DNA from: Mytilus trossulus
Taxonomy: Eukaryota
Assembly (NCBI RefSeq): GCF_036588685.1
Contig: NC_086381.1
Span: 54,002,001-54,066,000 of the forward strand
Direction: 5' to 3'
DNA: 64,000 bases
Shown here: one piece after another, positions 795 to 60,555 of the stretch
Layout of the letters: every line of letters starts with the position of its first letter
How positions within the stretch are numbered: the first letter of the stretch is position 1
Notes under the pieces: model-generated
Databases searched by the model: none
What the model saw: only the letters and a program-made list of their open reading frames with translations
Told to the model about the DNA's origin: nothing
Program-made: the position numbers and the translations under genes

Positions 795-985
795 AGGGGA
801 TAATTACAATCAAATATTTGATGGTTTTTCAATTTCTATTGTGGCTTATCCGTTCCTTTGGCACCTTCATATGGTGTTTATATATTTCAACTTCATCAAT
901 TCGGTCGTGCATGTAACAATGTATTTGATTTTAAGGTTCATCCATTGAAAAAATATGACCGTTTACACCACAAAATTATAAAATC
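795..985 (+). pseudogene. Degenerate Naiad/PLE RT C-terminal remnant
   Basis: Translates to ..VPLAPSYGVYIFQLHQFGRACNNVFDF.., cf. IPAAPAYGVYISQLIRYSRAC in the 995-aa ORF. Confidence 0.7.
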
Positions 986-1484: not shown

Positions 1485-2480
1485 AAACATATTACACCAG
1501 GGTTTTCGATATCACAAACTTGTCAAAAGTTTTACCTAATTTTATCATCGGTACCAGGACATACTTCGTAGATATAAGTCAATGAACAGAAATTTTATGC
1601 GTACAGGTTTATCACATCCCATCTTTTATGGTTATATTTTATCAAAGCACAAAAATGTCGTCATTAACCTGAAAAACTAACCAAACCTTTTAACAAACTT
1701 ATCAATAAGGGATATAGTTACGATAGTTACTCTTGTCAAGTCATTTAAGGTGGTACATAACACTACAGGGAGATACATTTGTAAAAATCAGCATAATGTT
1801 TTAATCACGTTCTATTGTTAAGGGAATATTAAGCTTCTCAAAGACCAAAATTAGTGTTTGTCAAACTGCTATGTATCCAATGATTTTTTTCGATAAAGTG
1901 AGTGGTTCAAGTTTTTTGAAATTTTTGTCAAAGGGTCAAAGTCAATATTTTGTCAAAATTTAATGAAAATTACACGAGCCAAATTAATTTTAGTCAAGCT
2001 GTTTGGTACAACCTTAAGACGTTTTTTTTTTTATTAATTAATATTTATTCACTCGTACACTGGGTCTTTGCATCAGAAATAAACACATTTATTCTTAACG
2101 CAATTGTTGGCATGATACTGATTATGTTCTTTTCTTATACATGTAACTTATAATACTAAATCCCTAATAGGAGAGATTGTGGTTGATTTTCTATACGATG
2201 GAGACATGATTTTGGATCAGTTTTATTGAGGTCTGCAGCTAGCATGTCAGTAACTGCTAGAAGTCCTTTATCATTTTGTTTTGATCATTGTGATTTTACT
2301 TAGTTTCTTCTGTTACCTATTCTCACATCGGCATCGGACTTCTTTTGATCTGATCGTATTGCTGTGTGTTTGTTTTTTCCCACATTGGCTAAAAGTATGA
2401 GATCTCACAGAACATGTTTGACCCATCCGCATGTTTGCGCCTGTCCCATGTCAGGACCCTCTAGCCTTTGTTATCTCTTA
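1485..2480 (+). mobile_element. Naiad family B 3' portion (RT C-terminus plus long 3' UTR with partial twister motif), interrupted by a MITE
   Basis: LHQGFRYHKLVKSFT*FYHRY resembles LNQEFQMVKLKSSLRKFYGRH of the intact ORF; downstream 2150-2460 aligns with the reverse complement of 42770-43085. Confidence 0.75.
1749..2013. mobile_element. Kolobok-like MITE
   Basis: TTAA on both sides (1745-1748, 2014-2017); termini GGTGGTAC...GTACAACC; interrupts the RT remnant. Confidence 0.7.
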
Positions 2481-15119: not shown

Positions 15120-15909
15120 ACTTTAGTTCGAAACAACGTAGATGAAACACAGGCAGAGAATTTGTTTTTATTGTAAGACAGCATTTTGATCTACAAGTAT
15201 TTGTAATGAATTTTTCCCTACTTATTATAAAAATTTAGAAATAAATGAGAATCCATAGTCATTGATAATATTTCTGTTGTCTGTCAAACAGATAAATATG
15301 TTTTAAGAAGAGTTTGAAAATATCGAGATGGTGTCATTATTTCTTTTATTTTTTATTTATGAAGGAAAGAAAAAACCAGGTCTACGGAGGCTTCTTTCTG
15401 CCGTCGTGAAGTCGAGTTGCCGAGATCATTAAATCGACTTGCCGAAATATTTACTACGGAAGAGTATATTGGCCTCGTGTTCGTTAATTTTATAACATAT
15501 TTATAATTAATTTTAAGCAAAGTAACACCTTATTTCACAATCTTTCTCTTACTTTTCTTGCATGTGTATGTCAGATTAATTTTAGGCGAGATAACGCATT
15601 GTTTCACATTTTTTTTGATATTTTCTCGCATATATAAATTAAAGTGCCATAATTTGTGATAAATAAATTGCCATGAATATGCTGTCGGTTTAACTTATAC
15701 GATTAAGCTGCCAAACAAAAACTGCTTCCGACTTCTTACTCAAGCCGCAGAAAATGTTGCTATTTTGAAAGTTATTGCTGAAAGATGTACGGTTTTGCTT
15801 TCAATTCACGTAAGTAGTTTTTTGTTAGTTTATGATGTGAAATGTTAAGTCGGGGTCACCCATATCAACCACAGAAATTTAGAAAAAAAGAAAAACAATC
15901 TGGTAAACT

Positions 15910-16060
15910 ACATAAGAAAATGCCTGTACCAAGTCAGGAATATGACAGTTGATATCCATTCGTTTGATGTGTTCGGACTTTTGATTTTGCCATTTAATGG
16001 GGGCTTTCCTTTTTGAATTTTCCTCGGAGTTCAGTATTTTTTGTGATTTTACTCTTTTTT
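15910..16060 (+). repeat. Dispersed repeat (cctgtaccaagtcaggaatatgacagttg family) with the 3' half of the twister motif
   Basis: Related copies at ~27065-27170(-), 29330-29520(+), 33050-33745(-, split by a MITE) and 37260-37740(+). Confidence 0.75.
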
Positions 16061-20327: not shown

Positions 20328-20562
20328 AAGGGACATTTAAACTCATAAGTTGAAAATAAACTGACAACGCCATAGCTATAAAGGAAAAAATACCAACAGA
20401 CAAACAATAGTACACACAACACAAAATAAGAAAATAAAGACTAAGCAACACGAACCCTACCAAAATCTGGGGCTGATCTCAGGTGCTCCGGAAGGGTAAG
20501 CAGATCCTGCTCCACATGGGGCACATGTCGTGTTGATCATGTTAGTACAAACCCGGTGAAAA
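20328..20562 (-). mobile_element. Older 3' UTR fragment of Naiad family A
   Basis: Aligns to 53316-53545 (tgatctcaggtgctccggaagggtaagcagatcctgctccacatg). Confidence 0.85.
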
Positions 20563-22729: not shown

Positions 22730-23030
22730 AGATGTGGTATGATTGCCAATGAAACAACTATCCACAAAAGACCAAAATGACACAGACATTAACAACTATA
22801 GGTCACCGTACGACCTTCAACAATGAGCGAATCCCATACCGCATAGTCAGCTATACAAAGCCCTGATAAGACAATGTAAAACAATTCAAACGAGAAAACT
22901 AACGGCCTTATTTATGTAAAAAAAAAAATGAACGAAAAACAAATATGTAGCACATAAACAAACGACAAACACTGAACTACAGGCTCCTGACTTGGGACAG
23001 GCACATACATAAATAATGTATCGGGGTTAG
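22730..23030 (-). mobile_element. Probable 5'-truncated retroelement 3' end with a partial twister motif (22986-23029)
   Basis: - strand TAA CCCC GA tacat..atgtg CCTGTCCCAAGTCAGG, followed by ~255 nt to the family terminus. Confidence 0.7.
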
Positions 23031-25010
23031 TTTTTTTTCCCAAAACTAAATATATTTTGTTTCAGACCGCCAACTCCAAATAATCAGTGATATACAAACA
23101 GCATACTCTGTATCACATATTAGCAATAAAGTGTAAAAGAAGAAAGGGATCTATTCAAACAATATGTTTATACGACAATTTAGAAAAAAGGCTTAAACAT
23201 ATGATATAGTTCATGCTATTTTTCATAAAAAGTGCAAAAACAAAAATTGAATGTAGATTTAAGTTGATTTGAACAAAATTGTATCGTGTCGCTAGGGCGA
23301 ACGACAGGTGTAAATATTTTGCCGTAGTTATGCACTTATGTTTAAGGGCTCAATAGAAATCATTAATTTGGAATAGAAGTAGCAACTAAAGAAATGGTAA
23401 TTGATCAAAATCAGGGCTTACTTTCTTTCAATAGACAAATAGCGATTTATGTGTCCATTCATTTAATACTATGCATATATTTGTAAACCAACACATGTCA
23501 AGATCTTGTAATATTAAATCGGAATACCTGGATTCTTGTTTGCATTGTAAAGTAAACAGCTTCTCAGAAACATTATATATATGAAACTAAATGCCGTAAT
23601 TTGAATTGATTTCCAATAAATGAACCGTTTAAAATTCTGTCCTGTAGAGTTGTACTGCATCACTGCTGCACTTTAAATGTTTTGTAATTCATAACAAACA
23701 AAACATAAACATGCGCATCAGACATTTCTTGATAGACGTCCTTCAACATGTAAAAATGAATATAGAACTGCAAAATCCGGACGCTAGTAGTTTGAGTGTG
23801 ATGACTGACATATATAGTGCTACCACTGTACAATAGTCGAATTTGAACTGAAATTACAAACAAGCATATCTGCTTTGAAACGTTGCCACAAACGAACGGA
23901 ACGGTTTAATTGTATTATCTATCATTAATTGCGTTTTGACTAATACACACTGTATGCAATTTACTGTATTCATTTTTTAATTTTTACTTCACAGTGTATG
24001 CAAAAGTTTGAATTGTGCAATTCGTCGTCTGTTCTAAAAAAAAACAACAGATTGAGTATGTTTTATGATAAAAAGATGTGAAGAAAATTTAAAATATGTG
24101 TGTGTAGCTTTTATACGGCATGAATAGAAAATGAAAGTTTTAAGAAATGCTTGTCTTTTTCCTGATCGGAGAGTGATAATACATTTGTTGTGCGTCCTTT
24201 GGAATATTTATGAGTTCTTGATGTCAAGTAATAACTGTTTATTCATTTTTGTTTGAAGACATCAATTTTCCGGTTTGATCAAATTTTTTTTTTCAAGGCT
24301 GCATATTTTTGTGATGCCATCCATTACCATTTCTAAATTAACTTCATATGCATTTCGTCAAGTATTTAAAATCGTTATGACCTACTTCATCATCGAAATG
24401 TCATAGAAATAGATTCTAAGTAGTTAGTTTTCCTGATTTTTACATCAATAAAATAGACAGGTCACTGTTTTGTCTTTCTTTTGATATCACAGTTTTTTTT
24501 TCTTCGAGCTTACGTCAGGATTTTCTAGACGACGGGGGATAACTCAATTCTGGAAGATATTCCACCATCCATCACAAACTCATTATACGTATGTTTAAAC
24601 ATTTGCATTTGTGTACTGTTTTACCCTGTGCGATTTTAGGGCTCTCATTTTCAACATAGAAGAAAGGGAATATCAGCCATTTTTACTTATGTGATATTCT
24701 TAAAAAGGGCATACTTAGTATTACTTATACAAATCTTAGCTGAAATATTTTTTTTCATACTTGTTTAAACAAAATTAAAACCCGACTGAAACCGCGAAGA
24801 CCCGAAAATAACCCCTTTGAAAACCGCCTGAAAATGTCAAAGAAAATGTAGTGGAAACGATACCAAGTTATCTGTCGAAATAGGAAAAGCTAAGACAAAC
24901 CAATTTATAGTAAACAAAAGTACATTAAATGCATTCTTCGTCTCTAGTACTTCCTTCCAGAAAACATTGTCCTTCCTTCCAGAAAATATTTATCCATGAA
25001 TATTACGAAA

Positions 25011-28300: not shown

Positions 28301-30124
28301 AAACAAATTAACCGAACTTCACTTTGCATTGGACGACAGCATACACAAATCAATGATGTTTGTTGTTAAAAATACTGTGACGCAGTCATCTATCTTTATA
28401 TGTTGATTTTTTTATTAGGAATATACATGAAACATCACAAACCGTATTGTAGATGATATGTGTATTAACAATACAAGTAAAATGATTAGTTAAAGAAACA
28501 AATAAAAAATGTGTAAAATGTTTTTTTCTCTGATCTATAATTTTCTTTTAAAAATACTAGTTTTAGTGACGTCAATTTATCAAACTTAGCAGGGTATTAG
28601 TACTCGGCCAGATTGTAGATTCGTCCATGCTTTCTCAAACATACAAAACATATGATGGGTCACCGTGTTGTTTTATAAGCTAAACGTCATGCTAAATTTC
28701 CCAAATATGCATAGATTGTTAATGCAAAATCACTTTTTTTTTGTGAATAAAAAGAAATCTATGAGATATAATTTTGAAATAAAATATGAGAAGATAGGTT
28801 TTAGATTGTTCTTTAAGAAAATAAAAATAAAAAATGGTGTCATCGACCTGGTTTTCTTTCTACAATTCAAAGTTGAACACTGCTTAATCATTCCATTTGA
28901 GTTATCACCCCTTTAATGGCTTAGTTGACAATTTGAATCGAACAAACAAAAACCTTTGGTACTGGATAAATCTGTCCAAATATTTCAATAAGCCACTCCT
29001 TTTCTTTTATTCATATTAACACTCATTACCCATTATTCTGTTTCAAAATTTGCAGATTTAAGCAAAGAACTTGACCTACTGGGAACTTCTATTTTACAAT
29101 CCAAGATGTGTTATACAGTTAATCTATCTAGTAAAAATAAATGTGAACCCTTGAATGAATTCGAACTTCCCCAATTTAGCTGTTATATGTACTCTACATT
29201 TTATTCACTACTCATACAAAAAAAAAACATAGTCTCGGTGCATTATGTATATGCCAGTTTGTTTTTCAAAGTTGAAGTATTTGTTTCTTTTTTTATAATG
29301 ATTAAGATTATAACACAATGCTGACTGTTGTACCCCTATTTTTTCTATTGTTACCTATTATGTCTGTTTGTTTTTGTTAGCACGTTGTCGTTATAGTAGA
29401 ATTTTATGCGATTGTAATACAAGTGAGATGTTTAGCTAGCTATAAGGTGTAATCCATCATTTTCTACAAAAGGGAATGTCTGAACCAAGTCAGGAATATG
29501 ACAGTTGTATTCCAATCGTTGTAATCATCGGATATTGTCCAAAACTATTGACTTTTAAGAATTGTCTGAGTCATGGGTAAACAGTTTCCAAAAGTATTTC
29601 TCAATTAGAACGAAAGCCGACCTGTGACTTCTTCTTATAAATTTTATGAATTAACACAAAATGTAAAAAAATAAAATAATAGCTGATCTATTTTACATTA
29701 TATAATAATTATTTATGGATATCCGTATCGTTAAAAATCCCTCACAGTCAGAGTCAGAGTAATTCGATTTATTATACTGCACGTTAAAATGCCATATTTT
29801 GATTGGCTAATACGAGGGTGTTAAATTACTCTATCACATGGTTAAGCGGGTGGTAATTTTTTTGAATGTCATTCCTCTCGTCTCGATCAATCAAAAATCG
29901 ACAATTCAAAGGATAATGAATTGAATTTACATCAAGTAATTAAAGACAATGCTTAAGTTCTACGTTTTGGCTCAGATTTTATTATTTGACTGTCATTTTG
30001 CTTCACTTCTGTTGATTGTTCTAATACCCATAACGTTGTTATATACGTGACGTCATATAAAATACTTTTAAATACAATTCATCTGTAAACGATAATAATG
30101 ATAGGACACTCAGTATAATAAATT

Positions 30125-35381: not shown

Positions 35382-38300
35382 GTGGAACAACAGAGACGCA
35401 AAGCGGGACATTTAGACTGTTAATGGACAACTTATCGTCAGATAGCGCTGAAATTGACTTGGAACCAGGTTAGCGTATAATTCCCTTTACACGATGCAAC
35501 ACAATATCCAAGACACAATAGAGACAAGTAAAGTCGTAGAAGGTAAAAATCTTTATGTTTTTTAAGAGTAAAAAATAAAAATAAAAGGAAATGTATATGT
35601 TAATTAACTGTAGGAGAGCATAACAATAGTATCATCATTATCATACATGTTAAAAAAATATAAAAAATACATGTTGTCATGACAAGGTAGAGATTTGTAA
35701 ATGAAATTTGTATTTGAAAAGCTTATGATATCCGGCCATGTTGGTTTGAACGATAAAATAAGGAATAACATTTATTGAAGAAGACTTATATGGTGTTACA
35801 TTGTTCATACAATTTTTGATATATTGGCCACTAGATTTTAAAAATCAACTAAAGAAAATCTTTTGAAATCATCTAAAATAGCTATGGAATCAGATCTGAT
35901 TGTCACTAACTGTGAGATAAAATGCGGAAGTTGTATATCAAAATACAGCAAAGTTTGCTCTCAATGGATTTATGACTTTCGAACAGCGGTACACTACTTT
36001 TGTCTTATTCAAAACGCATTGTTGACTACTTTTACTTTTTGTTTATATTTTTATACAGTTTTCAGTTACCTAACCTTGTTTTACAGTAAATTAACACTGT
36101 TGTAGGTCTACTATATACACAGGTTTATCATAACTTTTTTTTATGTATGTACAATGTATATAATAGTGTTCAAATATCATGACGACAATAATAAAGTACT
36201 CTCCAGATATATAAGTCGATATATTGGAAATAATGTAATACACTCATTATTTCATTGATAGAAAGTACCATTATGGTTAATAATTGCGAATAATAAAAAT
36301 AAATGGTTATCATATGAAAAAAGTAACTAGTAACCTACCATACATTTAACAGAATTTGTATTGAACCAGTAATCTGAACTACAATACTACTTTTATGCAC
36401 AACTGTTTGCGTATGCATTCGATATAGATCGATTTCTTCCTGAATTTCGTTGCTGAAATCTATCTTTCTTATTACCATTCACCAAATGCCTCAGTACTGT
36501 TTAGTTAAATGCTCTAATACTGTTGAAAGACTGCTTTCACTGGTTATTTTATACATGTTATACTTTTTGATGTTCATACCAAACACAAGTATTTGCAATA
36601 CAATTATTTCCTCGTGTTTCAATCGGCTTTGCGTTTGACCAGGTTTTTTTCTCTTGATTAGTTGATTTATGACCATGGAACTACAGTATACTACTGTTGC
36701 CCTCATTTATCACTAATCGATTCCTTACCAGATTAACAGCACTAAATGTCATTTATTTTGTGGAATGTAACAAGTTTATGTTTCTATATTATACACATCA
36801 TTTTATGAGATTACTATACATTGTAAACAAAAATATGATCAAGTACGCCAAATCACAAAAAAATCAATTCCTGATTGCTGTTTTTGTTTTGTAACAATGA
36901 TTTTTTTTTTTAAATTACAAACCAGATTTGTTTGCACTATCTTTGCAAGTGAGTACCGATACAAGTTCCGAGGGATTTTTTTTTTATAAACATAGGTCTG
37001 GAGTAGATTTTTATTTTCCAGCAACCTTAAATTCATAAATTATTTTGTGCATTTATTATTGAGATTATAAAGATGGCCAAAAGTGAAATTAATAGTTGCA
37101 ATTTAAAGAAAATCTTCATACGGAGATAATATCAAATACCATAATGTGATTTATTTTGGTTGCGATTCTCATCAAGTCGTACTATTCGCTTCAATAACAA
37201 CTAAGCTATACTTTAATTTACATATATTTACATTATTTATGTGTTTTATAGTTTGATTTAGAAAAAATCCTGTCATGTAGTTGTGTTATGTTAGTGTTAT
37301 ATTTAACATTGTCATACTAGTGCTTGGTTTGGCTAGCCACAAAACCAGGTTCAACCCACCACGTTTCTTAAAATGTCCTGTACCAAGTCAGGAAAATGGC
37401 AGTTGTTAATTTATAGTTCGTTTCTGTGTGTGTTGCATTGTCGTTTGTTTTTGTTCACTTCTGGTTTCTGTTGTTTCGTTGTTTTCCTCTTATAGTTGAT
37501 GTGTTTCCCTCGGTTTTGGTTTGTAACCCGGATTTTTTTTTGTCTCAATCGATTTATGACTTTCGAACAGCGGTATACTACTGTTGGCTTTATTTAAACC
37601 AGCTTTAATCTACCAGTTTATACATAAGACAGGAATATGACAGTTGTTTTCCGTTCGTTTGATGTGATTGAACTTTTGATTTTGCCTATTGATAACGGAT
37701 TTTCCGATTAGAATTTTCCTTGGGTTTATTTTTGTTGGTATCAATGTTATTTTCCTTTTTTTATAAAATTTACATTAATCCAAAGCTTGTTTATTTGATG
37801 ACCTTCTTCTCATTGTAATTAAAACAGTACTGAAGGGGCGTCCGTTTTGTAGTCGAGGGTGCATAGAAACGTATTTGTATGCTTTTAGAATTAAGATGTG
37901 AAATTAGATGATCTTTTGCGGTGAATATCCCGCTACCTAGATTTGTGCTGAAACGTATGCTCGAAACTACTCAGATGGATCATTGAGTGGCATGTTGCAA
38001 TATAAGTGTCAATCCTTTTTGGACCATACGTCCTTTAAATGGAAGATTTGACGTGCTATCCTGTTTACCGGTTGAACATATATGGACAATCTATCTTATG
38101 GGCCATGTAACCTAGTTATAGTAAAAAATATCGATGAATAATAAAGCAACCTATTGCTCAATTATATCATCGGTTGGCATTTCATGCGCCATCTTGTGTT
38201 TTAAATAAAAGATGGATGTCAAATACATTTTTTCTTCAAAGTGTTGATACACTCGGTTTCAGTAATTCAAAAATATACATGGAACAAGAAATATCATGTC

Positions 38301-38412
38301 CTCTCATTATTTCAATCATTGTAACTGAAGGAGAAAAACAAGTATTGTTAGGAAGGGCACAGTTTAGAAGAAAATTACCTCTGAATTCTATAAAAAGAAA
38401 ACAAAAATATAA

Positions 38413-39719: not shown

Positions 39720-41655
39720 GTTCGATACACTGAAACTTTTTGTTTTGGTATGTTTCAGTGTTTCAACAATCTGTATGCCTAGTAAAATAAAATAAAAACA
39801 AGTTAAAAAAATACATAACACACTAAAAAAGGAAAATCAAAATCTCTAGAAAAAAAAATATGTTACGATACTATGGTCACAACTATAAAAGAAAAACGTG
39901 TGGATCTTTGCGAATTAAAGATTACATTTTCCATAAAAAAAAAAAGTTTATTTCTCGAACCAAAGAACACAATTCCCGCGAAAAAAAATCACTATTGATA
40001 AGTTCTTGCATTTATTCCTATATTGTATATCGTTCAAGACAAGCATTTCACGAGTACAAATGTCAATACACACTCAATAGATTTAATATGGTTGGTAATA
40101 TGACTTTTTAAACATGTTAAATATAAAAAGATAAGGAGATGTTGTTTGAATGCCTATGAGACAACTGTCAAAATGAAGTGAATGTAAGCAATCATAGTCA
40201 ATCGTACAGCCTTCAACATTGCAAAATTCCCGTACCGTATAGTCGAAAATAAAAAATATGAAAAGATCAAAATACAAAAAAAAAATCACTATTATAAACA
40301 AAACAAGTTACGAAAACCAAACACGACAGACATGACGACAATCATTGAACTACAGGCTCTTGACAGGCACATAACTAATGTAGCGGGTTTGAACATATGT
40401 TTCAACTCGCAGCACTCCGGGGACAGTGGTGTAAATAAATTAGCCCCATTTATGCGTGTAAAAATATAAATTCAGATTACATGTTGTTATCTTCTATTAA
40501 AAAAGATATACATATTGAAGTCTTTTCACATAAGACGAGAAATAAGACAAGAAGGAACAACTGTTGATGGCCGTACGGTGACCTATAGTTGTTAATGTCT
40601 GTGTTATTTTGGTCTCTTGTGGAGAGTTGTCTCATTGGCAATCATACCACATCTTCTTTTTTATAACTCTAACGAAAGCAGCGTACGAGACATAAATGCA
40701 ATATATAGGACAACAAAGGTTACAGGATTATCTATAATATAGGTAAGCTCTTGATTGCAAACGTTCCAAACAATCTTTTGTGAAGCTGACATTAAGAAGA
40801 CAAAAAAAAAAGAAATCGCTTAAAATACTAGTATATAAACATATATATTACCGGATGGGTACTGCTATTGAAAAAAAAAACATCTGGATATTTGTCAAAA
40901 TTAAACGAATGTTTTCGAACATGCAGTTTAAATTAAGACATTTTTGAAACAAAAACACTTGATCCAATGATTCCTATATACACGTTTTTCAGCGTATGTT
41001 TCAACCATCAATAATGTACATTAAGGACAAGCGATGTGTGTTCAACCAGAGGCCATTAAAAAGTAACCCTTACATCACAATGTGTATAAACCTGTATAAA
41101 CATAATTATAAGTCGCGATGATAAAAACAGAAAAATATTTATACGTTCGAGCAAAATATACCTCATGAATAACCTTTCGTCAAAATAATATGGTATTTAT
41201 TATTCTAACATGACGTCCTTCAAACGCTTTGAGTACATACCCGTGGTAAAATATGAATATATTGCATTGGCTGTTCCGATCGTACTCCCACGTCATATGT
41301 TTTGTTAATGAATGAAGTACCCGACGTCATAGAAATTTAAGCATTTTACGGGAAAATACACGCTTTTGATACCGAAAATCATCACAACAAGGAAACGTAA
41401 ACAAACGATGCAAAAATGTGGTATAAGCCCATTTTTTTTATATACATAGAAGGCATATTTAAGTAAGTTATCATTAAAATTCATCGAAATCTATCTTTAT
41501 AAGTTTTGTGAATAGTTTGAGCATGTCACTTATTCTGTTTTCTCCGTTCTTTTACGCCAATCTAAAAGTGCGTGAATTTATGGGAACGGCAAATAATGGC
41601 CTCCACCTAGGGCGCTTCGATCCAAAAAAGTAGCCGTATTTGTCCTATTAGAATC

Positions 41656-41814
41656 GAAATAATTCATGGGGGCTTGAATATATCTAGATTTTACCACGGG
41701 TTGTCCCTTTATGCCGATATTTTACCCCTCGCTATCGCTCAGGGTAAAATATTTGTCATAAAGGGCCAACCCGTGGTAAAATAACGATATATTCAAGCCC
41801 CCATGAATTATTTC
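41656..41814. repeat. Long imperfect palindrome (~70-bp arms, GCTATCGC in the loop)
   Basis: gaaataattcatgggggcttgaatatatc...ttttaccacgggttg / caacccgtggtaaaa...gatatattcaagcccccatgaattatttc. Confidence 0.9.
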
Positions 41815-41924
41815 TTAATTATTTTTCAAAGAAAAAAAATAATTGTATTAATTAATAGTAACATTTCGTTAAATTATTGATAGTTTGTACTTTTCAATTT
41901 GGGTAAATAAAATCATAAACTTAC

Positions 41925-41976
41925 CCTTTTCAGCCTCTGACAATACTGTCCTTACAAGTAGTGTTGTCGTTTTATA
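41925..41976 (-). promoter_or_regulatory. Putative TATA promoter and non-coding first exon of the galaxin-like gene
   Basis: - strand TATAAAA (41976-41970), Inr-like ACAGT ~27 nt downstream, then donor GG|GTAAGT at 41925/41924; the ATG exon is preceded by acceptor gtttcag at 39730. Confidence 0.55.
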
Positions 41977-42579
41977 TGTATACGAGATCCAACATTTATT
42001 AATTTTGGTTCCGTAAACAGGAAATATGTTGTATTTGTAAGATCATCATCGTCAACATCATATGTTTTAAAATAAAAAAATGATCTCAAACTTTAGCTTT
42101 CCAAAATCTTTGATTACTGAACAAGCGGTTGGAAAAAAGAGGTATTTCTAATATTCCAATAAAATGAAAATAAAAAAAAAACACTAGGAATTTGTATATA
42201 CTCAAAACTGTTAAAGGCAGTTTATTTATATAACATTTTCCTCACATAATGAAACAGTATAAAGCCGGACAAAAATATTGGTTGTGAAATACAACTATGT
42301 ATTTGTTTTATTTAAACTGTAAATAGGGCATGTAGAAAAAACGATAATAGTGAAGATAGGAGTTATCATTCTCTTATATATACTTAATTAATTGCTTAGT
42401 ACAAAATAAATTATTTGATGATGTAATTACCATGATTAAGTGTATAAAGACCTTACCAATATTTTACAGAATGGATTGTTATCGACTTATATCCTTTACG
42501 GCGAAAAAAAATCGCATTTGAAAAATAAAGTGGAGTAATTAAATGGCGAATATTTCAAAGAGTTAACAACACTACCATA

Positions 42580-43555
42580 GGGTAGAAAACAGCTGAGTGC
42601 CACATACATGTATGATTCAACACATCGATAAAATACCGCACACCGAGGCGTGCTTCAACTTGTCCCTTAATAGTATGTGCAGTAGTTCGGTGAAAATGGA
42701 CGTCACACTAATCTAAAAAATATATAGATACACTAAAAATTAAATTATACAAGACTAAACAAGTCCAGAGGCGCCTAACTTAGGACAGGTGCAAACATAT
42801 GGCGGGGTTAAACTTTGTTAGATCTCAACCCTTCTCCTTATACCCCTAGCCAAAGTAGAATAAACAAACACAGAGCAATTCGCACAGTAAATTTCATTTC
42901 AAAAGAAGTTCGAGTGCGATGTCAGAAAAGGTAACAAATGATACTAAGCAAAATGAAAATGATATATAAATCAACATAGGACATATAGAAGCTACTGACA
43001 TGCCAGCTCCAGACCTCAATTAAATTGATTTAAGATTTAATAGGTATGAAATCAAGACCAATCCTTCCCGTTCGGAATTTAGTATCACACCATCTTCAAT
43101 ATATGATAATAAAATAATCCGTATCATGTCATCATATGGTTTTAGAACGTATAGGTTAAATTCTGATGCAAAACCCCAGTTAAGAATCAATATTGATACC
43201 AAAATGGGCCATCTTTAATGCCATGACTAACAGTATCGTTTATATATATCTTATGGATAGGTCTTGTTAAAGGTTTGTTTAATTTTTTTGGTGAATGCCG
43301 ATTTTTTGTGCTTTGTATAGAACATGTACAATATTACCATACAATATTGGATGTGAATCGAACAAGTTGAGACAAATAAACTCCATAAGATGGTGACAAC
43401 GGTACATCAGCATCTGACAATAGATACTTAACAATAGGAAATGGTAAATCATGTCTTTTTTCATAAATTTTGGTTTTGAGCTTCCTGCTAAAGTCACAAC
43501 GGTATATCGTTATTTGCTGTATTGACGGTTTCATAAATTTTATCTTTGACCTGTA
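42580..43555 (-). mobile_element. Naiad family B 3' portion (RT C-terminus, 3' UTR, twister-like motif at 42774-42837)
   Basis: LKTKIYEKRHDLPFPIVKYLLSDADVPLSPSYGVYLSQLVRF matches LKTKLYDKRDDFSFPIVNFPFLSSNIPAAPAYGVYISQLIRY; UTR homologous to 2150-2460. Confidence 0.8.
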
Positions 43556-45395
43556 AATAACTAAAAGTGTTTTGTTTTTATTGTTGTTGTTTTTTATCAT
43601 AACTTTATCTCGTAAGGTTTGGTTTTATATCAATTGACTTTCAAATCAAACTATTAAAGATACACGTAAGGAGGCCCTTTAAATAATGTATCTCATTCCG
43701 TTCGAGAGTAATGCGTTGCTAAAATCTTGTATAAAAGAACATATCACCACCTGTTTTATATTCTGTTCAGTGTGTGTGTGTGTGTGTATACTAATAACGT
43801 TTTGTATTTGTTCCTACTAATATTTTTCATAAGAGACAAAATTAAAAACAACCAGTTTAAAAATTTCAGGCAAACACCAATATCTAAAATTATATGCATA
43901 GGTGACTCTCATTAAGCATGATAAGGGTATTCTTTAACAAAATACTTTTACAAACTAGATAGCATTGGCATTATAATTTTCCGTAGTTGATAATTAAACA
44001 AAAAATATAACATCAGGTAAAACAACTCTACTCAAGAGTAAAACAAAATTTAAAAATCTCCACAACAAAAAACGAAAACCTGGTCATTTGCATGTAGCCT
44101 AGTACATACACACTTATGTTTTAAATGTTCACTGCCAACAAAAGTTGAAGTTTACATTTGTGTTTTCCCTTAAAGAATGTATGTCTTATATAATTTGAAG
44201 AAAAAACAAATCTTACCATTCAACCTGTTTGAATTGAAAGCTTACTTACTAGTAAATAATCTTAGCTCTAAAAAGCCACAAATATGATTGCCATATACAT
44301 AAATAGATAGGGATGCCCTCCATTGCTAAAGTAAGTTGGAAAATTACCTATAGTATTTGAGACGAAACTGTTTACAGTACACCAAATCAAAATTATGTAT
44401 TTTCAATTTTACCAGAATTGGATACAACGAACGAAAATAATACTTTGACCATTTTGATATTCTTCGTACTGGAGTTGCGATTGATTTTCCTTTTTTTAAG
44501 TATGTGACTTGTTTGAAATAGTTTCTTAATAAATGGGAAATAACTCAAATGTGAAATTTGTGTTTATAAAGTATCTGATAAAATAAAGCTTGAGCTGCAA
44601 AAGATAACATAAGCTCTTTGGTCGGATAACTGTCTCTTACACATTCACCATTCCCATTCTCAATTTTATTGGTTAGTAGGGAACTGCATTATATATATAT
44701 AAAGAACAGCTAGTGTGATTTGCATTAAACATTAAAATTGAGAAAAAAAAGATATTTCAAGGATTACAGTTTATACGTTTTTGCTGTAATGTCGACAAAG
44801 AGTCGGTATTTTTATGGAAACTCCCTGTGCTCCCTACATGCCGACTTATTTTATAACTGTAATTTATTCTTTAATAAAGACTGTCAGGAAAGATGAAAAA
44901 AGCTAGCATTATCATGCAACTTATACAGTTTCACGTTAATATCATCTCACTCAACAATTCAAATGTGCGTGTTATGTTTGAACTTATATGTCCTTGCACT
45001 AATTTAACGGATAACACATACATTATATTAGATGGCTACCTCCTTTGGCGCCCATTAAGTTATTGGTACTGAAGGTCAATGGTTGTATCGGTTTGCATTT
45101 GACGATATATTCTTGTTTTACCTATGCAGTTTTATGTGTACAGCTTTCTTTTTTTCTTTGAAACATACCTTAACTTGTAATTTCTCGATCTAAACACAGT
45201 TTATTAAATTCTTTCGAAGCTATTATTTCCTTGCAATCATAATTGCTATATTTGTATCGTTAAACTGTTTTGTACCACGTATCGGAATTTTCTGAAATAT
45301 GTGTAAAGCGGTTCAAAGGGAGCTGACCAATTACGTTATTCCATATTATCAGATAATATAAACTAATTAAAGCGATCATATGAGTGTTAATGTGA

Positions 45396-45932
45396 GGCGA
45401 AATATACCCGAGGGACATTCAAACTCATGGATCGAAACAAAAAAAAAACTGACAACGCCTTGACTAAAGAAGAAAAAGACAATTAGACAAATAATAGTAC
45501 ACACGTCACGACATAGAAAACAAAAGACAAAGCAAAATGAACCCAACCAAAAACTGGGGAAGATATCAGGTGCTCCAGATGGGAAAGCATATCCTGCTCC
45601 ACATGTTGCACCCGTCGTGTTGCTCATGTTATTACAAACCCAGTAAATGGTTATAACGGTAGGTTCCAATCGTAAAAGTCAACGGGATTGTAGTTTCGAC
45701 ATAAGGAACATATCCGATATCATTTGTGAAACGGATATTCCATAACGGTCAACCAACTCGTGGTAGCGTCCGTAACGATTACGAAGGGATGAATTCACTA
45801 CACCATTTGGAGCACTTTGTTTAATAGCTACCTTGTGAGCAGCAACCCTCTATCAAGCAAATACAAGCCCGGGAATATCGATTGATTGATATTGAAATGT
45901 TGCTACAAAGAAATGGAAAGTTCAAAATTTGG
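45396..45932 (-). mobile_element. Diverged Naiad family A-like 3' fragment (RT end plus UTR)
   Basis: Aligns to 53300-53872 (aaggaacatatccgatatcatttgtgaaacgg..ttccataacggtcaaccaactcgtg). Confidence 0.85.
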
Positions 45933-47297
45933 TTTGCAAAGGACCCTAACTGCCATTTTAAATTTTAGTTGCAATTGGTTTTGTATATAGCTACAAGGTG
46001 TAAAGTATATTGTCGATCGCGATATGCTTCATTGGCAAACTGTAAAGCTATTTATCAACATAGTTTATACTCTTGTAGTAAAAACAATATAATGGAGTTT
46101 AAATTCTGATTCGTAAACTCAAACAAATATAAAATATTTATCAAATAATCACAAACTCTCACAAGGGAGATGCCACTTGCAGAGACAAGCTCACATTTTA
46201 TTATACATATGAGGATAATAGTGTGGAAAGTTCGTATAAATACACCTTTATTAAGCAGCTGGTACTGGTTTTCCCATAATATATAGCTAGTGGTCTACAA
46301 AATCTGAAAATAAATAATATAAATAATAACAGTATTTACTTGGTAAAATCCTACTGTACACTTTGACTGTAATGGCTCGAATGACTTTAAACTACATGAG
46401 TTCACTCGTGCATGCACTCAATATCCTAATCGAACCGACCTTACTATAATAAACCAAACTAGTGTCAACTAGAAACCAACAACATTTTTGCATGTTCGAT
46501 TTTTGTACAACTTTGATAAATACTAATTCGTAATCTCAAACGAATATTAAATATTTATCAAATAACAACAAACTCTCACATGGGAGACGCCACTTGCAGA
46601 GACAAGTGCGCTCGAACACACAAAGAACGGGAAAATAGCATTGAGTATTTATGTTAATACCCTATTTTTTTATAAACAGATAATTGTGCTTTGGAGTCTT
46701 CTCTAACGTAACCATCCTTTTCTCTGTCCGATTTAACCTGTTTTGCTTCAGAATAATCCGATCAGAAATACCGGTGTAAGCCCTGGCTCTTGTATATGTA
46801 AGACGTCTGGAACTTATGAACATTGTACTTCTTAGTGAATGTTATTCTAACTAAAAATTAACCAAGGTGTATGTCAGCATCTTACATATAGCTATTAAAA
46901 GAAGTTTATTAAGCCATTGTTTCATATCTAATAATACCAATATGTATTTCTGAAGTTCAGCCAAATAGCTTCAATAATAATCAGTAGTGCCTAAAACATT
47001 CGTTCCAGTGAATTTAATTACTACATACTTAGTGACTTAAATAATAAACGTCCAAGTGGCTTCAATAACTACAAGCCTAGTGTCTTCACCAACAACCAGC
47101 CCAATGTCTTTAATAACAACCTGTCAAGTGTCTTTAACAACAATCTGTCCAGTGTCTTCAATAACAACCTGCCAAGTGTCTTTAATTACTGCATTTCCAA
47201 GAATTTACTCACGTTTTTTTGGTACATTTCTACCTTCGTATATATCAGTACTGTTCGGCAAGACAGATATCTTGTAATGTTATACTTTTTGTTTATT

Positions 47298-47508
47298 CAG
47301 TACTGATTTTGACAGTACTGTTTCAGTACTGATTTCAACAGTAGTGTTTTAGTACTGATTTTGACAGTACTGTTTCAGTTCTGATTTTGTCAGTACTGTT
47401 TCAGTACTGATTTTGACAGTACTGTTTCAGTTCTGATTTGGCAGTACTGTTTCAGTACTGGTTTTTTGACAGTACTGTTTCAGTGCTGATTTCGTCAGTA
47501 CTGTTTCA
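47298..47508. repeat. 26-bp minisatellite built on the palindrome CAGTACTG
   Basis: About 8 units of CAGTACTGATTTTGACAGTACTGTTT. Confidence 0.9.
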
Positions 47509-47599
47509 ATTCAACACTAATTAAATCAGTTCTATATCTGTAGGGAATGTTTCATTACTGTTGAACATATAAACATTGATTGAGTTAGTTTCAGAAAAA

Positions 47600-47667
47600 G
47601 GGAGAAGGTTTGGGCCCATTAAAACGTTTAATCCCGCTGCAAATGTTTGCACCTGTCCTAAGTCAGG
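47600..47667 (+). ncRNA. Putative twister ribozyme, type-P5 permutation (best-preserved copy)
   Basis: GGGA(P2) GA AGG(T1) ... U^AA UCCC(P2) GC(T2) UGCAAA/UUUGCA(P3) CCU GU CCU(T1) AA GU(T2) C AGG(P4); all twister core elements except a conventional P1. Confidence 0.7.
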
Positions 47668-47932
47668 AATCTGATGTACAGTAGTTGTCGTTTGTTTATG
47701 TAATATATACGTATTTCTCGTTTCTCGTTTTGTTTATATAGATTAGACCGTTGGTTTTCCCGTTTAAATGGTTTTACACTAGTAATTTTGGGGCCCTTTA
47801 TAGCTTGTTGTTCGGTGTGAGCCAAGGCTCCGTGTTGAAGGCCGTACTTTAACCTATAATGGTTTAATTTTTAAATTGTTATTTGGATGGAGAGTTGTCT
47901 CATTGGCACTCACACCACATCTTCCTATATCT
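47600..47932 (+). mobile_element. Probable 5'-truncated retroelement 3' end beginning at the twister motif
   Basis: Ends in ggatggagagttgtctcattggcactcacaccacatcttcctatatct; a shorter copy is at 33995-34196. Confidence 0.7.
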
Positions 47933-50900
47933 ATGTACCTCCTCTTTTCAGTGCATTTACTAATAGATCACTGTGTTCATAAAAAAGATGTCCTCTCTTT
48001 AAGTACGTAAATAAGCATCTTTTTTAAGGTTTTATTTGTTTCTATTTCAGGTAAAATTTAGTTTATTTACCTTACCTTAAAATTAGTTACAATGTTTACA
48101 TTTGAATGCATACAGTGATGCCTATTTAAAAGGTCGTAGGTTGTTTTGTATTTTTGGGGTGGGTTAATTGTTCTCTTTGGACACTTACCCCATTTCCATT
48201 CAATTTCTATATCGTGACATGTTGATGTCTTCAACGACAACCTGCCCAGTGTCTTCAACAATTACCAGCCCATTGTTCTCAACACCAATCAGCCCAGAGT
48301 CCTCAACAACAACCATTCAAATGTCTTCTATGAGTCCAGTGTCTTCAAGAACTACCAGCCAAGTGTCTTCAATAACAACCTAACCAGTGGCTTCAACAAC
48401 AACTAGACCAGTCCCTTCCAGTCTCTTCAACAACTACCAGCCAAGTGTCCTCAACAACAACCAGCACAGGGTCTCCAACAACAACCAGCTGAGAATCTTC
48501 ACTAACTACAAGCTCAGTGTCTTCAATAACAACATGCCCAGTGGCTTCAATACCAAATTTCCCAGTGGCGTCTATACTAACCTGCCCATTGGCGTTTTTA
48601 CCCACCTTTTAAGTAGCGTCAATAACAACATGCCTAGTGACATCAATAATGATCTGCCTAGTGTCTCAAATAACTATAACTATTCAGCCCAGTGGCTTTA
48701 AAAATGACATGCCAAGTGGCTTCAACAAAATTAACAACAACCTGTCAAGTGGCTTCAACAACAAACTGCTCAGTTGCTTCAAAAACAACCCGCCCAGTGG
48801 ATTCAACAACAACCTGTACAGTGGCTTCAATACCAACCTGCTCAGTGGGGTCTTTACCAACCTGCCTAGTAACTTAAATAACTATAGCTTACAAGTCAGT
48901 GGTTATAATTACGACAATCTAAGTGGTTTCAACAACAACCAGCCACGTGTCTTCAACATCATGATGTCCACTGGCGTCCATAACAACCTGCACAGTGTCT
49001 CCAATAACAACCTGCCCAGTGGCTTCAATAACAAGATGTCCAGTGTCTTTCATACCAACCTGACCAGTGGTGTCTATACCAACCTGCCCAGTGGCGTCAA
49101 TAAAACATGCCCAGTGGCCTAAATAACTATCAGCCCAGTAGCTTTAATTACGAACTGCCCAATGGCGTCAAAAACAACATGCCCAGTGGCTTCAATAACA
49201 ACCAGCCTAGTGGCCTTAATACCAGTCTAGTGGCGTCTATACAAACCTGCCCTTTGGCATCAATAACAACATGCTCAGACGATTCATGTTGTTATTGATG
49301 CCCAGTAACTTAATTACTATAGCTATCAGCCCAGTGGCTTTAATTTCGACAATCCAAGTGGTTTATATAACAACCAGCCACGTGTATTCAACATCATGCT
49401 GCCCACTGGCGTCAATAACAACTTGCCCAGTGACTTTAATAACAATCTACCCAGTGGCTTCAATAACAACCTTCTTAGTGGCTTCCATACTAACCTGCCC
49501 AGTGGCTTCCATACCAACCTGCCCAGTGGCTTAAATAACTATCAGTCATGTGCATTTAATCACAACATGCCCAGTGGCTTTAACAACAACCAGCACAGTT
49601 GTCTTCAACAACATCCGCCCCACTGGCGTCAATAATAACCTGCCCAGTGGCGTCAATAGCAACATGCCCGGTGGCTTAAATAACTATCAGCCCAGTGGCT
49701 TTAATTACGACTTGCCCAATGTCTTCAATAACAACATGCCTAGTAGCCTCAACTACAACCTGCCCAGTTGCGTCAATAACAACCTGTCCATTGGCGTCAA
49801 TAACAACCAGTTCAGTGGCTTCAACCAAAACTTGCCCAGTAGCTTCAATAAAAACATGCCCAGCGTTTTAAATAACTATCAGCACTGTGGCTTTAATTAC
49901 GACTTGCTGAGTGGCTCCACTAACAACTAGTCCAGCGGCATCAATGACATCCAACCAGTGACTTTGACTTCCTTAACAACCTGCCTAAGTGGCTTTAATA
50001 ACTATCAGTCATTTGCCTTCAATTTACAATATGCCAAGTGACCTCAATAACAAGCAGTTAGATGGCTTCAATAACAATCAACCCAGTGACTTCAATTACA
50101 AACAGTCAAGTGGCTATGATAAAAATGAGCACATTGGCTTCGATAATAACCAGTCAATTAGCATCAATGACAATCAGTCAGGTGCACTAGGTTTCAATAT
50201 TAACCAACACATGCACTAGATTTAACCATCAAAGAGCCAAGTGATTAAGACAAATAGTTACTCAGAAAGTACTCAATCCTAAAGAAATCTTCTAGTATCA
50301 ATCCCAGTGGTAATTAACAATGATTAAGCAACAATAATCAAACAAACTCTTAGTAACTGTATTATAATTTAGCTACAGTTCATAATACTATACATTATAT
50401 CATCTGCGCATGTCAGATTGTTATTTACCCTTTTTTAACCTTTTTAACAGTTAGTAATCATTAAAATCTGATGTATTACTGGATACCACCAAAAGAAGAA
50501 CTGAATTATTTATTCCCAAACTAGTTTAACTACACGTAGGTTAAAAAAAGTGACGCCCTTTTTTTTCGATCTTTGTACCGAAACAGTGAGTGAATTAATT
50601 ACACTAAAATATGTACTATATAAGATACAGATACAAATGTATTTCAAATATTAAACTCTGAACAAGGATAAAAAAATAAATAATTATAGTCTACACAATT
50701 CCTTACTCTGAATTAGTTTCTAAAACAATTGCAGCATTATTATATAGTTCTTGTTAAATATAACAGTATAACTGGTAAAACCGGGATCAACGGGATAGAA
50801 TAACTATTATCAATCATGTCTAAACAAATGAATTATCTTTCAAATAATTATATGGTCTTCTCATTTACCTAAACCGATTACGGAGAGGGATTCTTTTTCA

Positions 50901-59972: not shown

Positions 59973-60555
59973 AAGATGTGGTATGATTGCCAATGAGACA
60001 ACTCTCCGCAAGAGACCAAATGACTAAGAAATAAACAACTATATGTCTTCGTACGGCCTTCAACAAAAAGCAAAGCACATACCGCATAGTCAGTTATAAA
60101 AGGCCCCGAAATGACAAATGTAAAACAATTCAAACGAGAAAACTAAAGGCCTAATTTATATACAAAACTGAAATGAACTAAAACTAAAATGTAACACATC
60201 AACAAACGACGACCACTGAATTACAGGCTCCTAACTTGGGACAGGCACATATATACAGAATGTGGCGGGGTTACATATGTTAACTGGATCAAAACCCTCA
60301 CACTAACTGGGACAGTGGTGTAACAGTACAACATTAGAACAAACTAAAAAAAATAGTTGAAAAAAGCTTAGCTCATCAGATGGATACAAATAGAAATACA
60401 TCTAACAAAAAAACAGAGTGGACGTGGCTGTATACTTGTACATGTATATCCCAACAACAATACGACACTAAGTACAGGTCTGAGAGTACTCGCAATAACT
60501 GAGAGCTAGTCCAAAGCCACAAACAAATAATTAAAACAATCATGCATCTAAGACT
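59973..60555 (-). mobile_element. Longer copy of the agatgtggtatgattgcc family containing a twister-like motif (60230-60303)
   Basis: - strand GTGT GA GGG ... TAA CCCC GC CACAT..ATGTG CCT GT CCC AA GT T AGG. Confidence 0.7.

What the first reader, a model, noticed from the sequence alone, without database searches (positions are those of the whole stretch)
47600..47667. Type-P5 twister ribozyme motif in the 3' regions of Naiad-related retroelement families
Seen: in the + strand RNA, GGGA(47600-03) pairs with UCCC(47632-35), followed by the conserved GA. AGG(47606-08) pairs with CCU(47657-59). UAA lies at 47629-31, GC pairs with GU as the second pseudoknot, and there is a P3 hairpin plus P4 CCU/AGG enclosing GUCCUAAGUC. 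The same skeleton recurs at 2391-2455(+), 15923-15938(+), 22986-23029(-), 29423-29494(+), 37320-37392(+), 42774-42837(-) and 60230-60303(-). The T1 pseudoknot covaries between copies (AGG/CCU, GGG/CCC, GGU/ACC), P2 is GGGA/UCCC here with CCCC on the 3' side in other copies, and T2 is GC/GU or AC/GU. Two copies (2391, 42774) lie sense-strand a few hundred nt downstream of Naiad RT remnants. Established: twisters cleave at U^A and have a GUCCCAAGC-type L4 with two pseudoknots; canonical PLEs carry hammerheads in their pseudo-LTRs, whereas Naiads were described as lacking canonical hammerheads. Inference: some Naiad lineages use a twister instead, cleaving in successive tandem repeats to release unit-length RNA. 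I am not aware of this association being described, but cannot verify novelty.
Basis: partly seen in the sequence, partly recalled or inferred. Interest (0 to 1): 0.9.

Follow-up and report, generated by a model that had tools for sequence, protein, structure and literature searches.

The report
Twister-type ribozyme in Naiad retroelement tails
The 84-base stretch has the fold and key bases of a rearranged "twister" self-cutting RNA. It lies in the tail of a very abundant Penelope-like (Naiad-type) jumping gene, a group reported to lack any ribozyme, but cutting itself has not been shown.

Summary
Observation confirmed. All eight listed loci are recovered by a motif search (8 found, 0.14 expected) and by my own covariance model.

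The focal copy belongs to a young family (97-99% identical copies) that is the 3' tail of a 5'-truncated retroelement. Its RT has long relatives with an N-terminal GIY-YIG domain, which is the Naiad architecture. At least five families carry the motif, and P5, P3 and the T1 pseudoknot keep pairing through changes on both sides. P2 does so between families A/C and B but is poor in D and E.

Three weaknesses remain.
- There is no intramolecular P1. Two self-complementary words sit there instead, and the first stays palindromic in at least eight spellings, which suggests pairing between two copies.
- Rfam's Twister-P5 model scores at most 23.4 bits, below its 37.6 cut-off.

Seven of the eight window copies are decayed. 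An intact Naiad in the same window has no twister.

No held paper links twister with Naiads. The scan has already noted this motif elsewhere in this genome.

The parts
47588..47938 (+). 5'-truncated copy of retroelement family B (3' tail only). Other copies extend upstream into an RT ORF.
   Evidence: Genome copies are 95-99% identical over query 69-419. 5' ends vary and the 3' end is fixed. The RT ORF is seen in L044 and L058.
47591..47595 (+). P5, 5' strand (UCAGA)
   Evidence: Pairs with 47670-74. It appears in the MFE fold. Each family has a different closing helix here.
47600..47603 (+). P2, 3'-side strand in the canonical numbering (GGGA)
   Evidence: Pairs with UCCC 47632-35. Column pair 7-76 is GC in 32 rows and AU in 14.
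47604..47605 (+). GA; by position the G is the twister general base
   Evidence: Aligned to GA of the Rfam Twister-P5 consensus. The role is taken from PMC11662667.
47606..47608 (+). T1 pseudoknot, 5' strand (AGG)
   Evidence: Pairs with CCU 47657-59. T1 was not part of the model, yet it covaries.
47611..47618 (+). Palindrome 1 (UGGGCCCA), in the place of the P1 hairpin
   Evidence: At least eight palindromic spellings occur across families. The predicted homodimer is favoured, with a ddG of -14.5 kcal/mol.
47623..47628 (+). Palindrome 2 (AACGUU), directly 5' of the cleavage-site U
   Evidence: The AAC..GUU frame is kept in families A to E, but only 69% of cells pair.
47629..47631 (+). UAA; predicted cleavage between U47629 and A47630, with A47630 as the general acid by position
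   Evidence: Aligned to UAA of the Rfam twister models.
47632..47635 (+). P2, other strand (UCCC)
47636..47637 (+). T2 pseudoknot strand (GC)
   Evidence: Pairs with GU 47662-63. Column pair 80-172 is GU in 52 rows and AU in 36.
47638..47651 (+). P3 hairpin (UGCAA AUGU UUGCA)
   Evidence: All five pairs change on both sides between families.
47652..47667 (+). P4 (CCUG/CAGG) with loop L4 UCCUAAGU, which carries the T1 and T2 partners
   Evidence: There are 39,139 exact genome matches to CCTGTMCYAAGTCAGG and 0 for the reversed control. The variant CCUGUCCCAAGUCAGG (as in families A and C; one base different from the focal copy, which has U at 47659) is present in a canonical Twister-P5 that passes Rfam's cut-off.
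47670..47674 (+). P5, 3' strand (UCUGA)
60226..60306 (-). Family A copy of the motif, with P2 decayed (GUGU opposite CCCC)
   Evidence: R1 scores 63.9 bits. Feature count.
22982..23044 (-). Family A copy that begins at the UAA. Its 5' half is missing.
42770..42840 (-). Family C copy (AA in place of GA), about 450 nt downstream of RT remnant 43295-43501(-)
2392..2459 (+). Family C copy, heavily decayed, about 670 nt downstream of RT remnants 849-1721(+)
37317..37396 (+). Family D copy (short unit of about 330 bp); GA lost and P2 poor
29420..29498 (+). Family E copy, decayed
15886..15942 (+). Family E copy with an internal deletion

Best explanation
The stretch 47591-47674 is the sense-strand image of a twister-class self-cleaving ribozyme in the type-P5 circular permutation. 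It sits about 290 nt before the 3' end of a Naiad-type Penelope-like retroelement, family B. This copy is 5'-truncated, so only the tail is present.

Shown here:
- The RNA can form P5, P2, P3 and P4 plus the two pseudoknots T1 and T2.
- It keeps the U^AA site, the GA after P2 and the L4 loop.
- P5, P3 and T1 persist through compensatory changes across at least five element families. P2 does so between families A/C and B.

Inferred:
- The transcript cleaves between U47629 and A47630.
- The canonical P1 hairpin is replaced by two self-complementary words, so two copies may pair with each other (neighbouring tandem copies or separate RNAs). This would parallel the dimeric hammerheads of other Penelope-like elements.
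- Cleavage would process tandem or read-through transcripts. Which RNA end it defines is not known.
For: - Sequence: every helix and conserved base is present.
- Rfam: Twister-P5 (RF02684) aligns end to end with a family C copy at 23.4 bits, E = 0.0035 in a 170-nt search, skipping only P1. Twister-P1 matches the focal core weakly.
- Positive control: a canonical metagenomic Twister-P5 with the family A/C P4-L4 16-mer CCUGUCCCAAGUCAGG (one base different from the focal copy) scores 49.7 bits against a cut-off of 37.6.
- Covariation on 94 distinct rows: 81.5% of cells are paired, against 69.9% when shuffled (0 of 500 shuffles reach it) and 24-44% when the partner is slid. The covariation score is 0.302, against 0.146 shuffled and at most 0.088 slid.
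- T1 was not in the model that made the alignment, yet it shows GC 59 / AU 12 at one pair and GC 43 / UA 35 at another.
- P5 is a different helix in each family. A helix of at least 5 bp is found in 76% of copies, against 30% when flanks from different families are combined.
- 22 of 27 family B copies keep every core feature.
- Published tolerance rules say P1 is dispensable and that wobbles in the pseudoknots and flaws in P2 are tolerated (PMC11662667).
- Naiad link: the RT ORF lies upstream in L044. The protein P0001 is 99% identical. Long relatives have an N-terminal GIY-YIG and a C-terminal RT.
- Palindrome 1: GGGAUCCC, GGGCCC, GGAUCC, GGCUAGCC, GGCAUGCC, AGCUAGCU, AGCGCU, GAGAUCUC and GGUACC. 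The homodimer ddG is -12 to -17 kcal/mol in six of seven representatives, against about -7 +/- 3 for shuffles.
Against:
- Neither the focal copy nor any other reaches an Rfam gathering score.
- No intramolecular P1 exists, and 8-12 nt separate palindrome 1 from the cleavage site. That geometry has no studied precedent that I know of.
- Families D and E pair only 2-3 of 4 positions in P2.
- Folding energy is not unusual (z = -0.95 for the focal copy).
- Cell counts count related copies, not events. The independent lineages number about five to eight.
- An excess of 5' ends at the predicted cut was seen in a small local sample (4 of about 17 within 2 nt). Genome-wide pattern counts did not confirm it: 10 at the site against 43 and 69 at control positions, and the controls are confounded by subfamilies.
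- Copies keep sequence on both sides of the site and share a fixed 3' end, so the cut does not define the ends of the template.
- An intact Naiad in the window has no twister.
Confidence: 0.68

Rival explanations
1. The fold is twister-derived and under selection, but it no longer cleaves or cleaves negligibly. Instead it serves as a structured 3'-UTR element, for example a handle recognised by the element's RT during target-primed reverse transcription. The palindromes would then act as an RNA dimerisation signal.
For: P1 is missing and P2 is poor in the abundant families D and E. Genomic copies retain both sides of the putative cut and share a 3' end 290 nt further on. There is no genome-wide excess of 5' ends at the site. 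The motif is conserved in non-autonomous short units, as expected for a cis-acting handle.
Against: The catalytic positions (A after the cut, the G of GA) and both pseudoknots are kept in the young family B (22 of 27 copies). These bases matter for catalysis rather than for a generic fold. Canonical Penelope-like elements carry active ribozymes at the same place (PMC6765202).
Confidence: 0.2
2. The conserved block works at the DNA level, for example as a promoter or protein-binding site within the pseudo-LTR, with the palindromes as dimeric protein sites. On this view the twister likeness is a coincidence.
For: The palindromes resemble 6-10 bp protein-binding sites. Penelope pseudo-LTRs are known to carry the promoter (PMC8557442). 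Folding z-scores are weak.
Against: Compensatory changes occur in a long-range pseudoknot (T1) and in P5 and P3. A DNA site does not predict these. The palindrome changes its letters while keeping its symmetry. The 16-mer of families A and C is identical to that of a canonical twister.
Confidence: 0.05
3. The motif is a SINE-type conserved central domain shared by unrelated mollusc short elements, and its link to Naiads is incidental.
For: Family D is a short unit of about 330 bp with a defined 5' end. Mollusc SINE superfamilies with conserved central domains are known (PMC4758252).
Against: No tRNA or Pol III head was found. Family B runs continuously from the RT ORF to the motif. Family C copies in the window follow RT remnants in the same order. 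I could not compare with the published SINE domains, because no sequences are held.
Confidence: 0.05

Closest known systems
Type-P5 twister ribozyme (Rfam RF02684, clan CL00120)
   Same: Same order of elements: P2 strand, GA, T1 strand, P1 region, UAA, P2 strand, GC, P4 with L4. Same conserved bases. The P4-L4 16-mer of families A and C (one base different in the focal copy) is identical to that of a canonical member, L085.
   Different: There is no P1 hairpin; two palindromes stand in its place. A P3 hairpin is inserted where the model has about 4 nt. L4 ends in U rather than C, giving a G.U wobble in T2. The score is below the gathering threshold.
Dimeric minimal hammerhead ribozymes of Penelope-like elements (Cervera and de la Pena 2014; Lunse et al. 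2017, as summarised in PMC6765202)
   Same: A ribozyme in the 3' or pseudo-LTR region of a PLE. One helix is too short to form alone and carries a palindrome, so two copies must pair. The elements are arranged in tandem.
   Different: A different ribozyme class (twister, not hammerhead) in the PLE clade reported to lack hammerheads. Dimerisation is only inferred here.
[quoted passage not shown]
   Same: A twister-class ribozyme embedded in, and inherited with, a retrotransposon.
   Different: Those sit at the 5' end, and their cleavage defines the 5' end of the element RNA, with target-site duplications contributing to P1. Here the motif is about 290 nt from the 3' end and copies keep both sides of the site.
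Naiad clade of Penelope-like elements (Craig et al. 2021, PMC8557442)
   Same: N-terminal GIY-YIG, CxC and DKA motifs, C-terminal RT, partial tandems, 5'-truncated copies, and very high copy number in bivalves.
   Different: The clade was described as lacking canonical hammerheads and no ribozyme was assigned. Here several families carry a twister fold, while at least one intact family in the window does not.

Membership tests
Twister ribozyme (type P5) | Cleavage site N^A-A in the internal loop, with the A as general acid | tested here: met
   UAA at 47629-31 aligns to UAA of the Rfam models. It is kept in 26 of 27 family B copies.
Twister ribozyme (type P5) | G of the GA that follows P2 (general base) | tested here: met
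   GA at 47604-05. The role is taken from PMC11662667.
Twister ribozyme (type P5) | Pseudoknot T1 between L4 and the strand after GA | tested here: met
   AGG pairs with CCU in the focal copy. Two of three pairs change on both sides across families, and 86.5% of cells are paired.
Twister ribozyme (type P5) | Pseudoknot T2 between L4 and the dinucleotide after P2 | tested here: met
   GC pairs with GU (C-G plus a G.U wobble). 95% of cells are paired, but only one-sided changes are seen, so there is no compensatory proof.
Twister ribozyme (type P5) | P2 and P4 helices and the L4 consensus UCCCAAGC | tested here: met
   Both helices are 4 of 4 in the focal copy. L4 is UCCUAAGU. P2 is poor in families D and E.
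Twister ribozyme (type P5) | P1 helix closing the cleavage-site strand | tested here: not met
   No complementary strands exist; there are two palindromes instead. The literature calls P1 dispensable.
Twister ribozyme (type P5) | Score at or above Rfam's gathering threshold | tested here: not met
   No hit in the window at gathering. The best score was 23.4 bits against 37.6 on L073.
Twister ribozyme (type P5) | Site-specific self-cleavage | not testable with these tools
A bench assay is needed.
Naiad Penelope-like element | PLE-type RT at the C-terminus of the ORF, upstream of the motif on the same strand | tested here: met
   A 275-aa RT C-terminus in L044 ends about 700 nt before the motif. 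There are 7,806 homologues with E below 1e-5.
Naiad Penelope-like element | N-terminal GIY-YIG endonuclease | tested here: inconclusive
   Present in long relatives P0122, P0130, P0138, P0144 and P0157, and readable by eye in the window's own 995-aa ORF, where Pfam reported no GIY-YIG hit.
Naiad Penelope-like element | CxC linker motif, and DKA in place of DKG | tested here: inconclusive
   Both are readable in the window's intact ORF, which is 42-44% identical to the family B RT. They were not seen for family B itself.
Naiad Penelope-like element | No canonical hammerhead | tested here: met
   No hammerhead match anywhere in the window, even at E up to 10.

The most novel reading that the evidence does not exclude
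Naiad elements use an obligate-dimer twister. The P1 hairpin has been replaced by covarying palindromes, so an active ribozyme assembles only when two copies pair, either adjacent tandem copies or two transcripts. That would be a convergent solution with the dimeric hammerheads of other Penelope-like elements. It would also imply that a copy-number-sensing ribozyme, of whatever class, is a required part of the Penelope-like life cycle.
Probability: 0.3. Interest if true: 0.9.

Novelty: new variant of a known kind. Interest (0 to 1): 0.77.

Why it matters
Penelope-like elements are defined in part by hammerhead ribozymes in their pseudo-LTRs. The Naiad clade dominates bivalve genomes and was reported to lack them, which led to the suggestion that the ribozyme is dispensable or merely parasitic. 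If several Naiad families carry a twister at the equivalent place, the ribozyme requirement may be general and the class interchangeable.

That would give twister a second retrotransposon role and about 39,000 genomic instances in one animal. The palindromes in place of P1 would also be a first natural candidate for a twister that works only as a dimer. The prediction is directly testable with a transcript of about 90 nt.

Tried and rejected
- Rfam at gathering threshold on the whole window found nothing.
- A whole-genome search with RF02684 gave no match, but the controls were silent too, so it is uninformative.
- I first suspected a tRNA-derived SINE, because UAAUCCC resembles a B box. I dropped this once family B was seen to run from an RT ORF with variable 5' truncation.
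- An LTR-like reading of two family A copies 5.3 kb apart in L031 was rejected: no RT lies between them and the whole block is duplicated.
- 5' ends at the predicted cut as evidence of in vivo cleavage: suggestive locally, not confirmed genome-wide. I do not count it as support.
- The Craig et al. and CHiTA supplements are not held.
The script held typed copies of the short majority strings printed.
- Only short majority strings (220 nt or less) of the non-coding motif region were made. No full-length or repaired element sequence was built.
- Complex prediction, structure tools and phage or plasmid searches were not relevant.

Full report
**What is at the site**

The sequence at 47588-47680 reads, on the + strand:
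- UCAGA, the P5 strand (47591-95)
- AAAA
- GGGA, a P2 strand (47600-03)
- GA (47604-05)
- AGG, a T1 strand (47606-08)
- UU
- UGGGCCCA (47611-18)
- UUAA
- AACGUU (47623-28)
- U^AA (47629-31)
- UCCC, the other P2 strand (47632-35)
- GC, a T2 strand (47636-37)
- the hairpin UGCAA-AUGU-UUGCA, which is P3 (47638-51)
- CCUG-UCCUAAGU-CAGG, which is P4 with loop L4 (47652-67)
- AA
- UCUGA, the other P5 strand (47670-74)

The minimum-free-energy fold of 47588-47678 gives exactly P5, P2, P3 and P4. Its energy is not unusual (z = -0.95), as is common for small pseudoknotted RNAs.

**Is it more than chance?**

- Genome-wide, CCTGTMCYAAGTCAGG has 39,139 exact matches. The reversed control has none.
- A covariance model I built from seven copies (R1) recovers all eight loci in the window. 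It finds 114 copies in the 352 kb of this genome that I held.

**Comparison with the curated twister models**

- At gathering thresholds Rfam reports nothing in the window.
- In a narrow search the focal copy matches only twister-P1, over the UAA-to-P4 part (14.4 bits).
- A better-preserved family C copy (L073:667-733, minus strand) matches Twister-P5 (RF02684) over the full model at 23.4 bits, E = 0.0035 for that 170-nt search. The cut-off is 37.6 bits.
- In that alignment P2, GA, GGG, UAA, GC and P4/L4 all match. The 20 model positions of the P1 hairpin are skipped and P3 is treated as an insertion.
- As a positive control, a metagenome contig carrying the family A/C form of the 16-mer (CCUGUCCCAAGUCAGG) plus a normal P1 hairpin passes the cut-off at 49.7 bits (L085:562-615). 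The focal family B copy differs from that 16-mer by one base (U at 47659).
- So the motif is a Twister-P5 without P1 and with P3 added.

**Covariation**

I added the two pseudoknots and both palindromes to the model-made alignment A4 (94 distinct rows). Neither pseudoknot was part of the model. Results:

| Measure | Observed | Shuffled | Partner slid 1-3 columns |
|---|---|---|---|
| Cells paired | 81.5% | 69.9% (0 of 500 reach it) | 24-44% |
| Covariation score | 0.302 | 0.146 | at most 0.088 |

- T1 shows GC 59 / AU 12 / GU 5 at one pair and GC 43 / UA 35 at another.
- P2's outer pair shows GC 32 / AU 14.
- All five P3 pairs change on both sides.
- T2 changes on one side only (GU 52 / AU 36).
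- These counts are of related copies, not independent events. By family consensus the independent lineages are about five to eight:
  - A: GGGG/CCCC in P2, GGG/CCC in T1
  - B: GGGA/UCCC, AGG/CCU
  - C: like A
  - D and E: GGU/ACC in T1, AC or AU opposite GU in T2
- P5 is a different helix in each family:
  - A: CAGG/CCUG plus ACCACUG/CAGUGGU
  - B: UCAGA/UCUGA
  - C: GCUAGAGG/CCUCUGGC
  - D: UGCCAU/AUGGCA
  - E: CUGCCAUA/UAUGGCAG
- A closing helix of at least 5 bp is found in 76% of copies. When flanks from different families are combined, the figure is 30%.

**Weak points of the fold**

1. No intramolecular P1 can form.
2. Families D and E pair only two or three of four P2 positions.
3. L4 ends in U, which gives a G.U wobble in T2.

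A high-throughput cleavage study of about 1,900 natural twisters found that P1 is dispensable. It also found that flaws in P2 and P4 and wobbles in the pseudoknots are tolerated, whereas the general acid (the A after the cut) is essential and changes at the general base (the G after P2) reduce cleavage (PMC11662667). Both bases are present here. In the young family B, 22 of 27 copies, including the focal one, keep every core feature.

**The palindromes**

An 8-10 nt self-complementary word stands where the P1 hairpin should be. Its letters differ while its symmetry is kept:
- UGGGAUCCCG (A)
- UGGGCCCA and UGGAUCCA (two subfamilies of the 97-99% identical family B, so this is a recent double change)
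- UGAGAUCUCA (C)
- UGGCUAGCCA and UGGCAUGCCA (D)
- UAGCUAGCUA and UAGCGCUA (E-like)
- UGGUACCA (an old B-like copy)

In one search its inner pairs show GC 46 / CG 29 and AU 45 / UA 31. A palindrome of this length cannot fold on itself through its central pairs, so the kept symmetry argues for pairing between two molecules.

Cofolding predicts a homodimer gain of -12 to -17 kcal/mol in six of seven representatives, against about -7 +/- 3 for shuffled sequences. Family E is the exception, with -8.0 kcal/mol, which is no different from shuffles.

A second frame, AAC..GUU, lies directly before the cleavage-site U. It is less well kept (69% of cells paired).

This parallels the dimeric minimal hammerheads of other Penelope-like elements (PMC6765202). 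The geometry of such a twister dimer is my inference and is untested.

**What the element is**

- Copies of family B are 95-99% identical. They share a 3' end about 290 nt after P4, and their 5' ends lie anywhere from 46 nt to more than 1,560 nt upstream of P4. That is the signature of reverse transcription from the 3' end.
- The longest loci (L044, L058) run into an RT reading frame whose stop lies about 700 nt before the motif.
- That RT is 99% identical to a 462-aa database protein.
- Its long relatives (892-996 aa) have the RT at the very C-terminus and a GIY-YIG domain at the N-terminus. This is the Naiad/Chlamys architecture.
- In the window, family C copies at 2392-2459(+) and 42770-42840(-) lie about 670 and 450 nt downstream of RT remnants on the same strand.
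- Family D is a short unit of about 330 bp, and family A includes a unit of about 1.65 kb without an ORF. These are probably non-autonomous derivatives.
- Craig et al. state that Naiads lack canonical hammerheads and do not mention twister. No held paper contains both words, and papers holding both 'twister ribozyme' and 'Penelope-like' do not link them.

**Limits on the functional claim**

- I looked for copies whose 5' end coincides with the predicted cut. Among incidental copies, four of about seventeen truncations fall within 2 nt of it, from families A, A, C and D.
- Genome-wide counts for family A give 10 such junctions, against 43 and 69 at two control positions and 4,073 intact junctions. 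The controls are inflated by subfamily variants, so the test is inconclusive and I do not count it as support.
- Copies keep both halves of the ribozyme and a fixed 3' end, so the cut does not set the ends of the retrotransposed template.
- Not all Naiads here have the motif. The window holds an intact 995-aa Naiad ORF at 53595-56582(-), in which the GIY-YIG, CxC and DKA motifs can be read by eye in the translation. It sits in partial tandem with a second copy, and its 305-nt 3' UTR shows no twister.

**Other DNA**

A scan of metagenome contigs for the 16-mer found:
- near-identical family A and C copies (L121, L106, L155)
- a diverged copy (L084)
- canonical-looking twisters with the same 16-mer, of which L085 passes Rfam's cut-off; L094 looks like a type-P1 twister by eye but did not reach the gathering score
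- a separate repeat in eleven contigs, where the 16-mer is followed by AUAA-AGUGG-GAGGG, which is the type-P1/P3 order

The last group was not followed up.

The scan's own earlier notes describe the same motif, the Naiad link and the palindromes at other places in this genome. I reached the same reading from my own tests and do not count those notes as evidence.

**Verdict**

The identification as a twister-class fold in Naiad tails is well supported by anatomy and covariation. Catalysis, dimerisation and biological role remain inferences. I rate it a new variant of a known kind, with high interest for ribozyme and transposon specialists.

Noticed in passing
window 53595-56582 (-), with 56983-58134 (-): An intact 995-aa Naiad ORF in which the GIY-YIG, CxC (PDCTCAS) and DKA motifs can be read by eye in the translation (Pfam reported only a weak RT match). 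It lies in partial tandem behind a second RT copy. The shared 3' UTR of about 305 nt is 99% identical, which suggests a recently active element. It has no twister or any Rfam ribozyme match downstream.
   Followed up: partly
window 323-487, 20326-20564, 45398-45699: Further pieces of the 3' UTR of that twister-less Naiad family (80-95% identical).
   Followed up: no
window 47296-47512: A tandem repeat of about 26 bp (cagtactgtttcagt...) directly upstream of the family B copy. The element may have inserted beside a minisatellite.
   Followed up: no
window 33285-33437: A long inverted repeat that matches several plant microRNA precursor models on both strands, below their thresholds. It is probably a MITE-like hairpin.
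   Followed up: no
genome contig C1:1156668-1156954 (outside the window): The P4-L4 16-mer CCTGTACCAAGTCAGG repeats every 39 bp. This looks like a satellite built from the D/E-type motif.
   Followed up: no
L088, L091, L100, L108, L113, L120, L130, L142, L143, L145, L160 (metagenome contigs): A different repeat in which the same 16-mer is followed by AUAA-AGUGG-GAGGG. That is a twister-like order of type P1 or P3, probably from another invertebrate host.
   Followed up: no
window about 37,000-45,000: This block, with its family D and C copies, recurs 93-97% identical about 80 kb further along the same contig. It is a segmental duplication.
   Followed up: no
L023:1460-1548 (-) and flank: A family C copy that begins at its UAA is joined directly to the 3' end of a family A copy. 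This is an example of the nested or tandem insertions typical of Penelope-like elements.
   Followed up: partly
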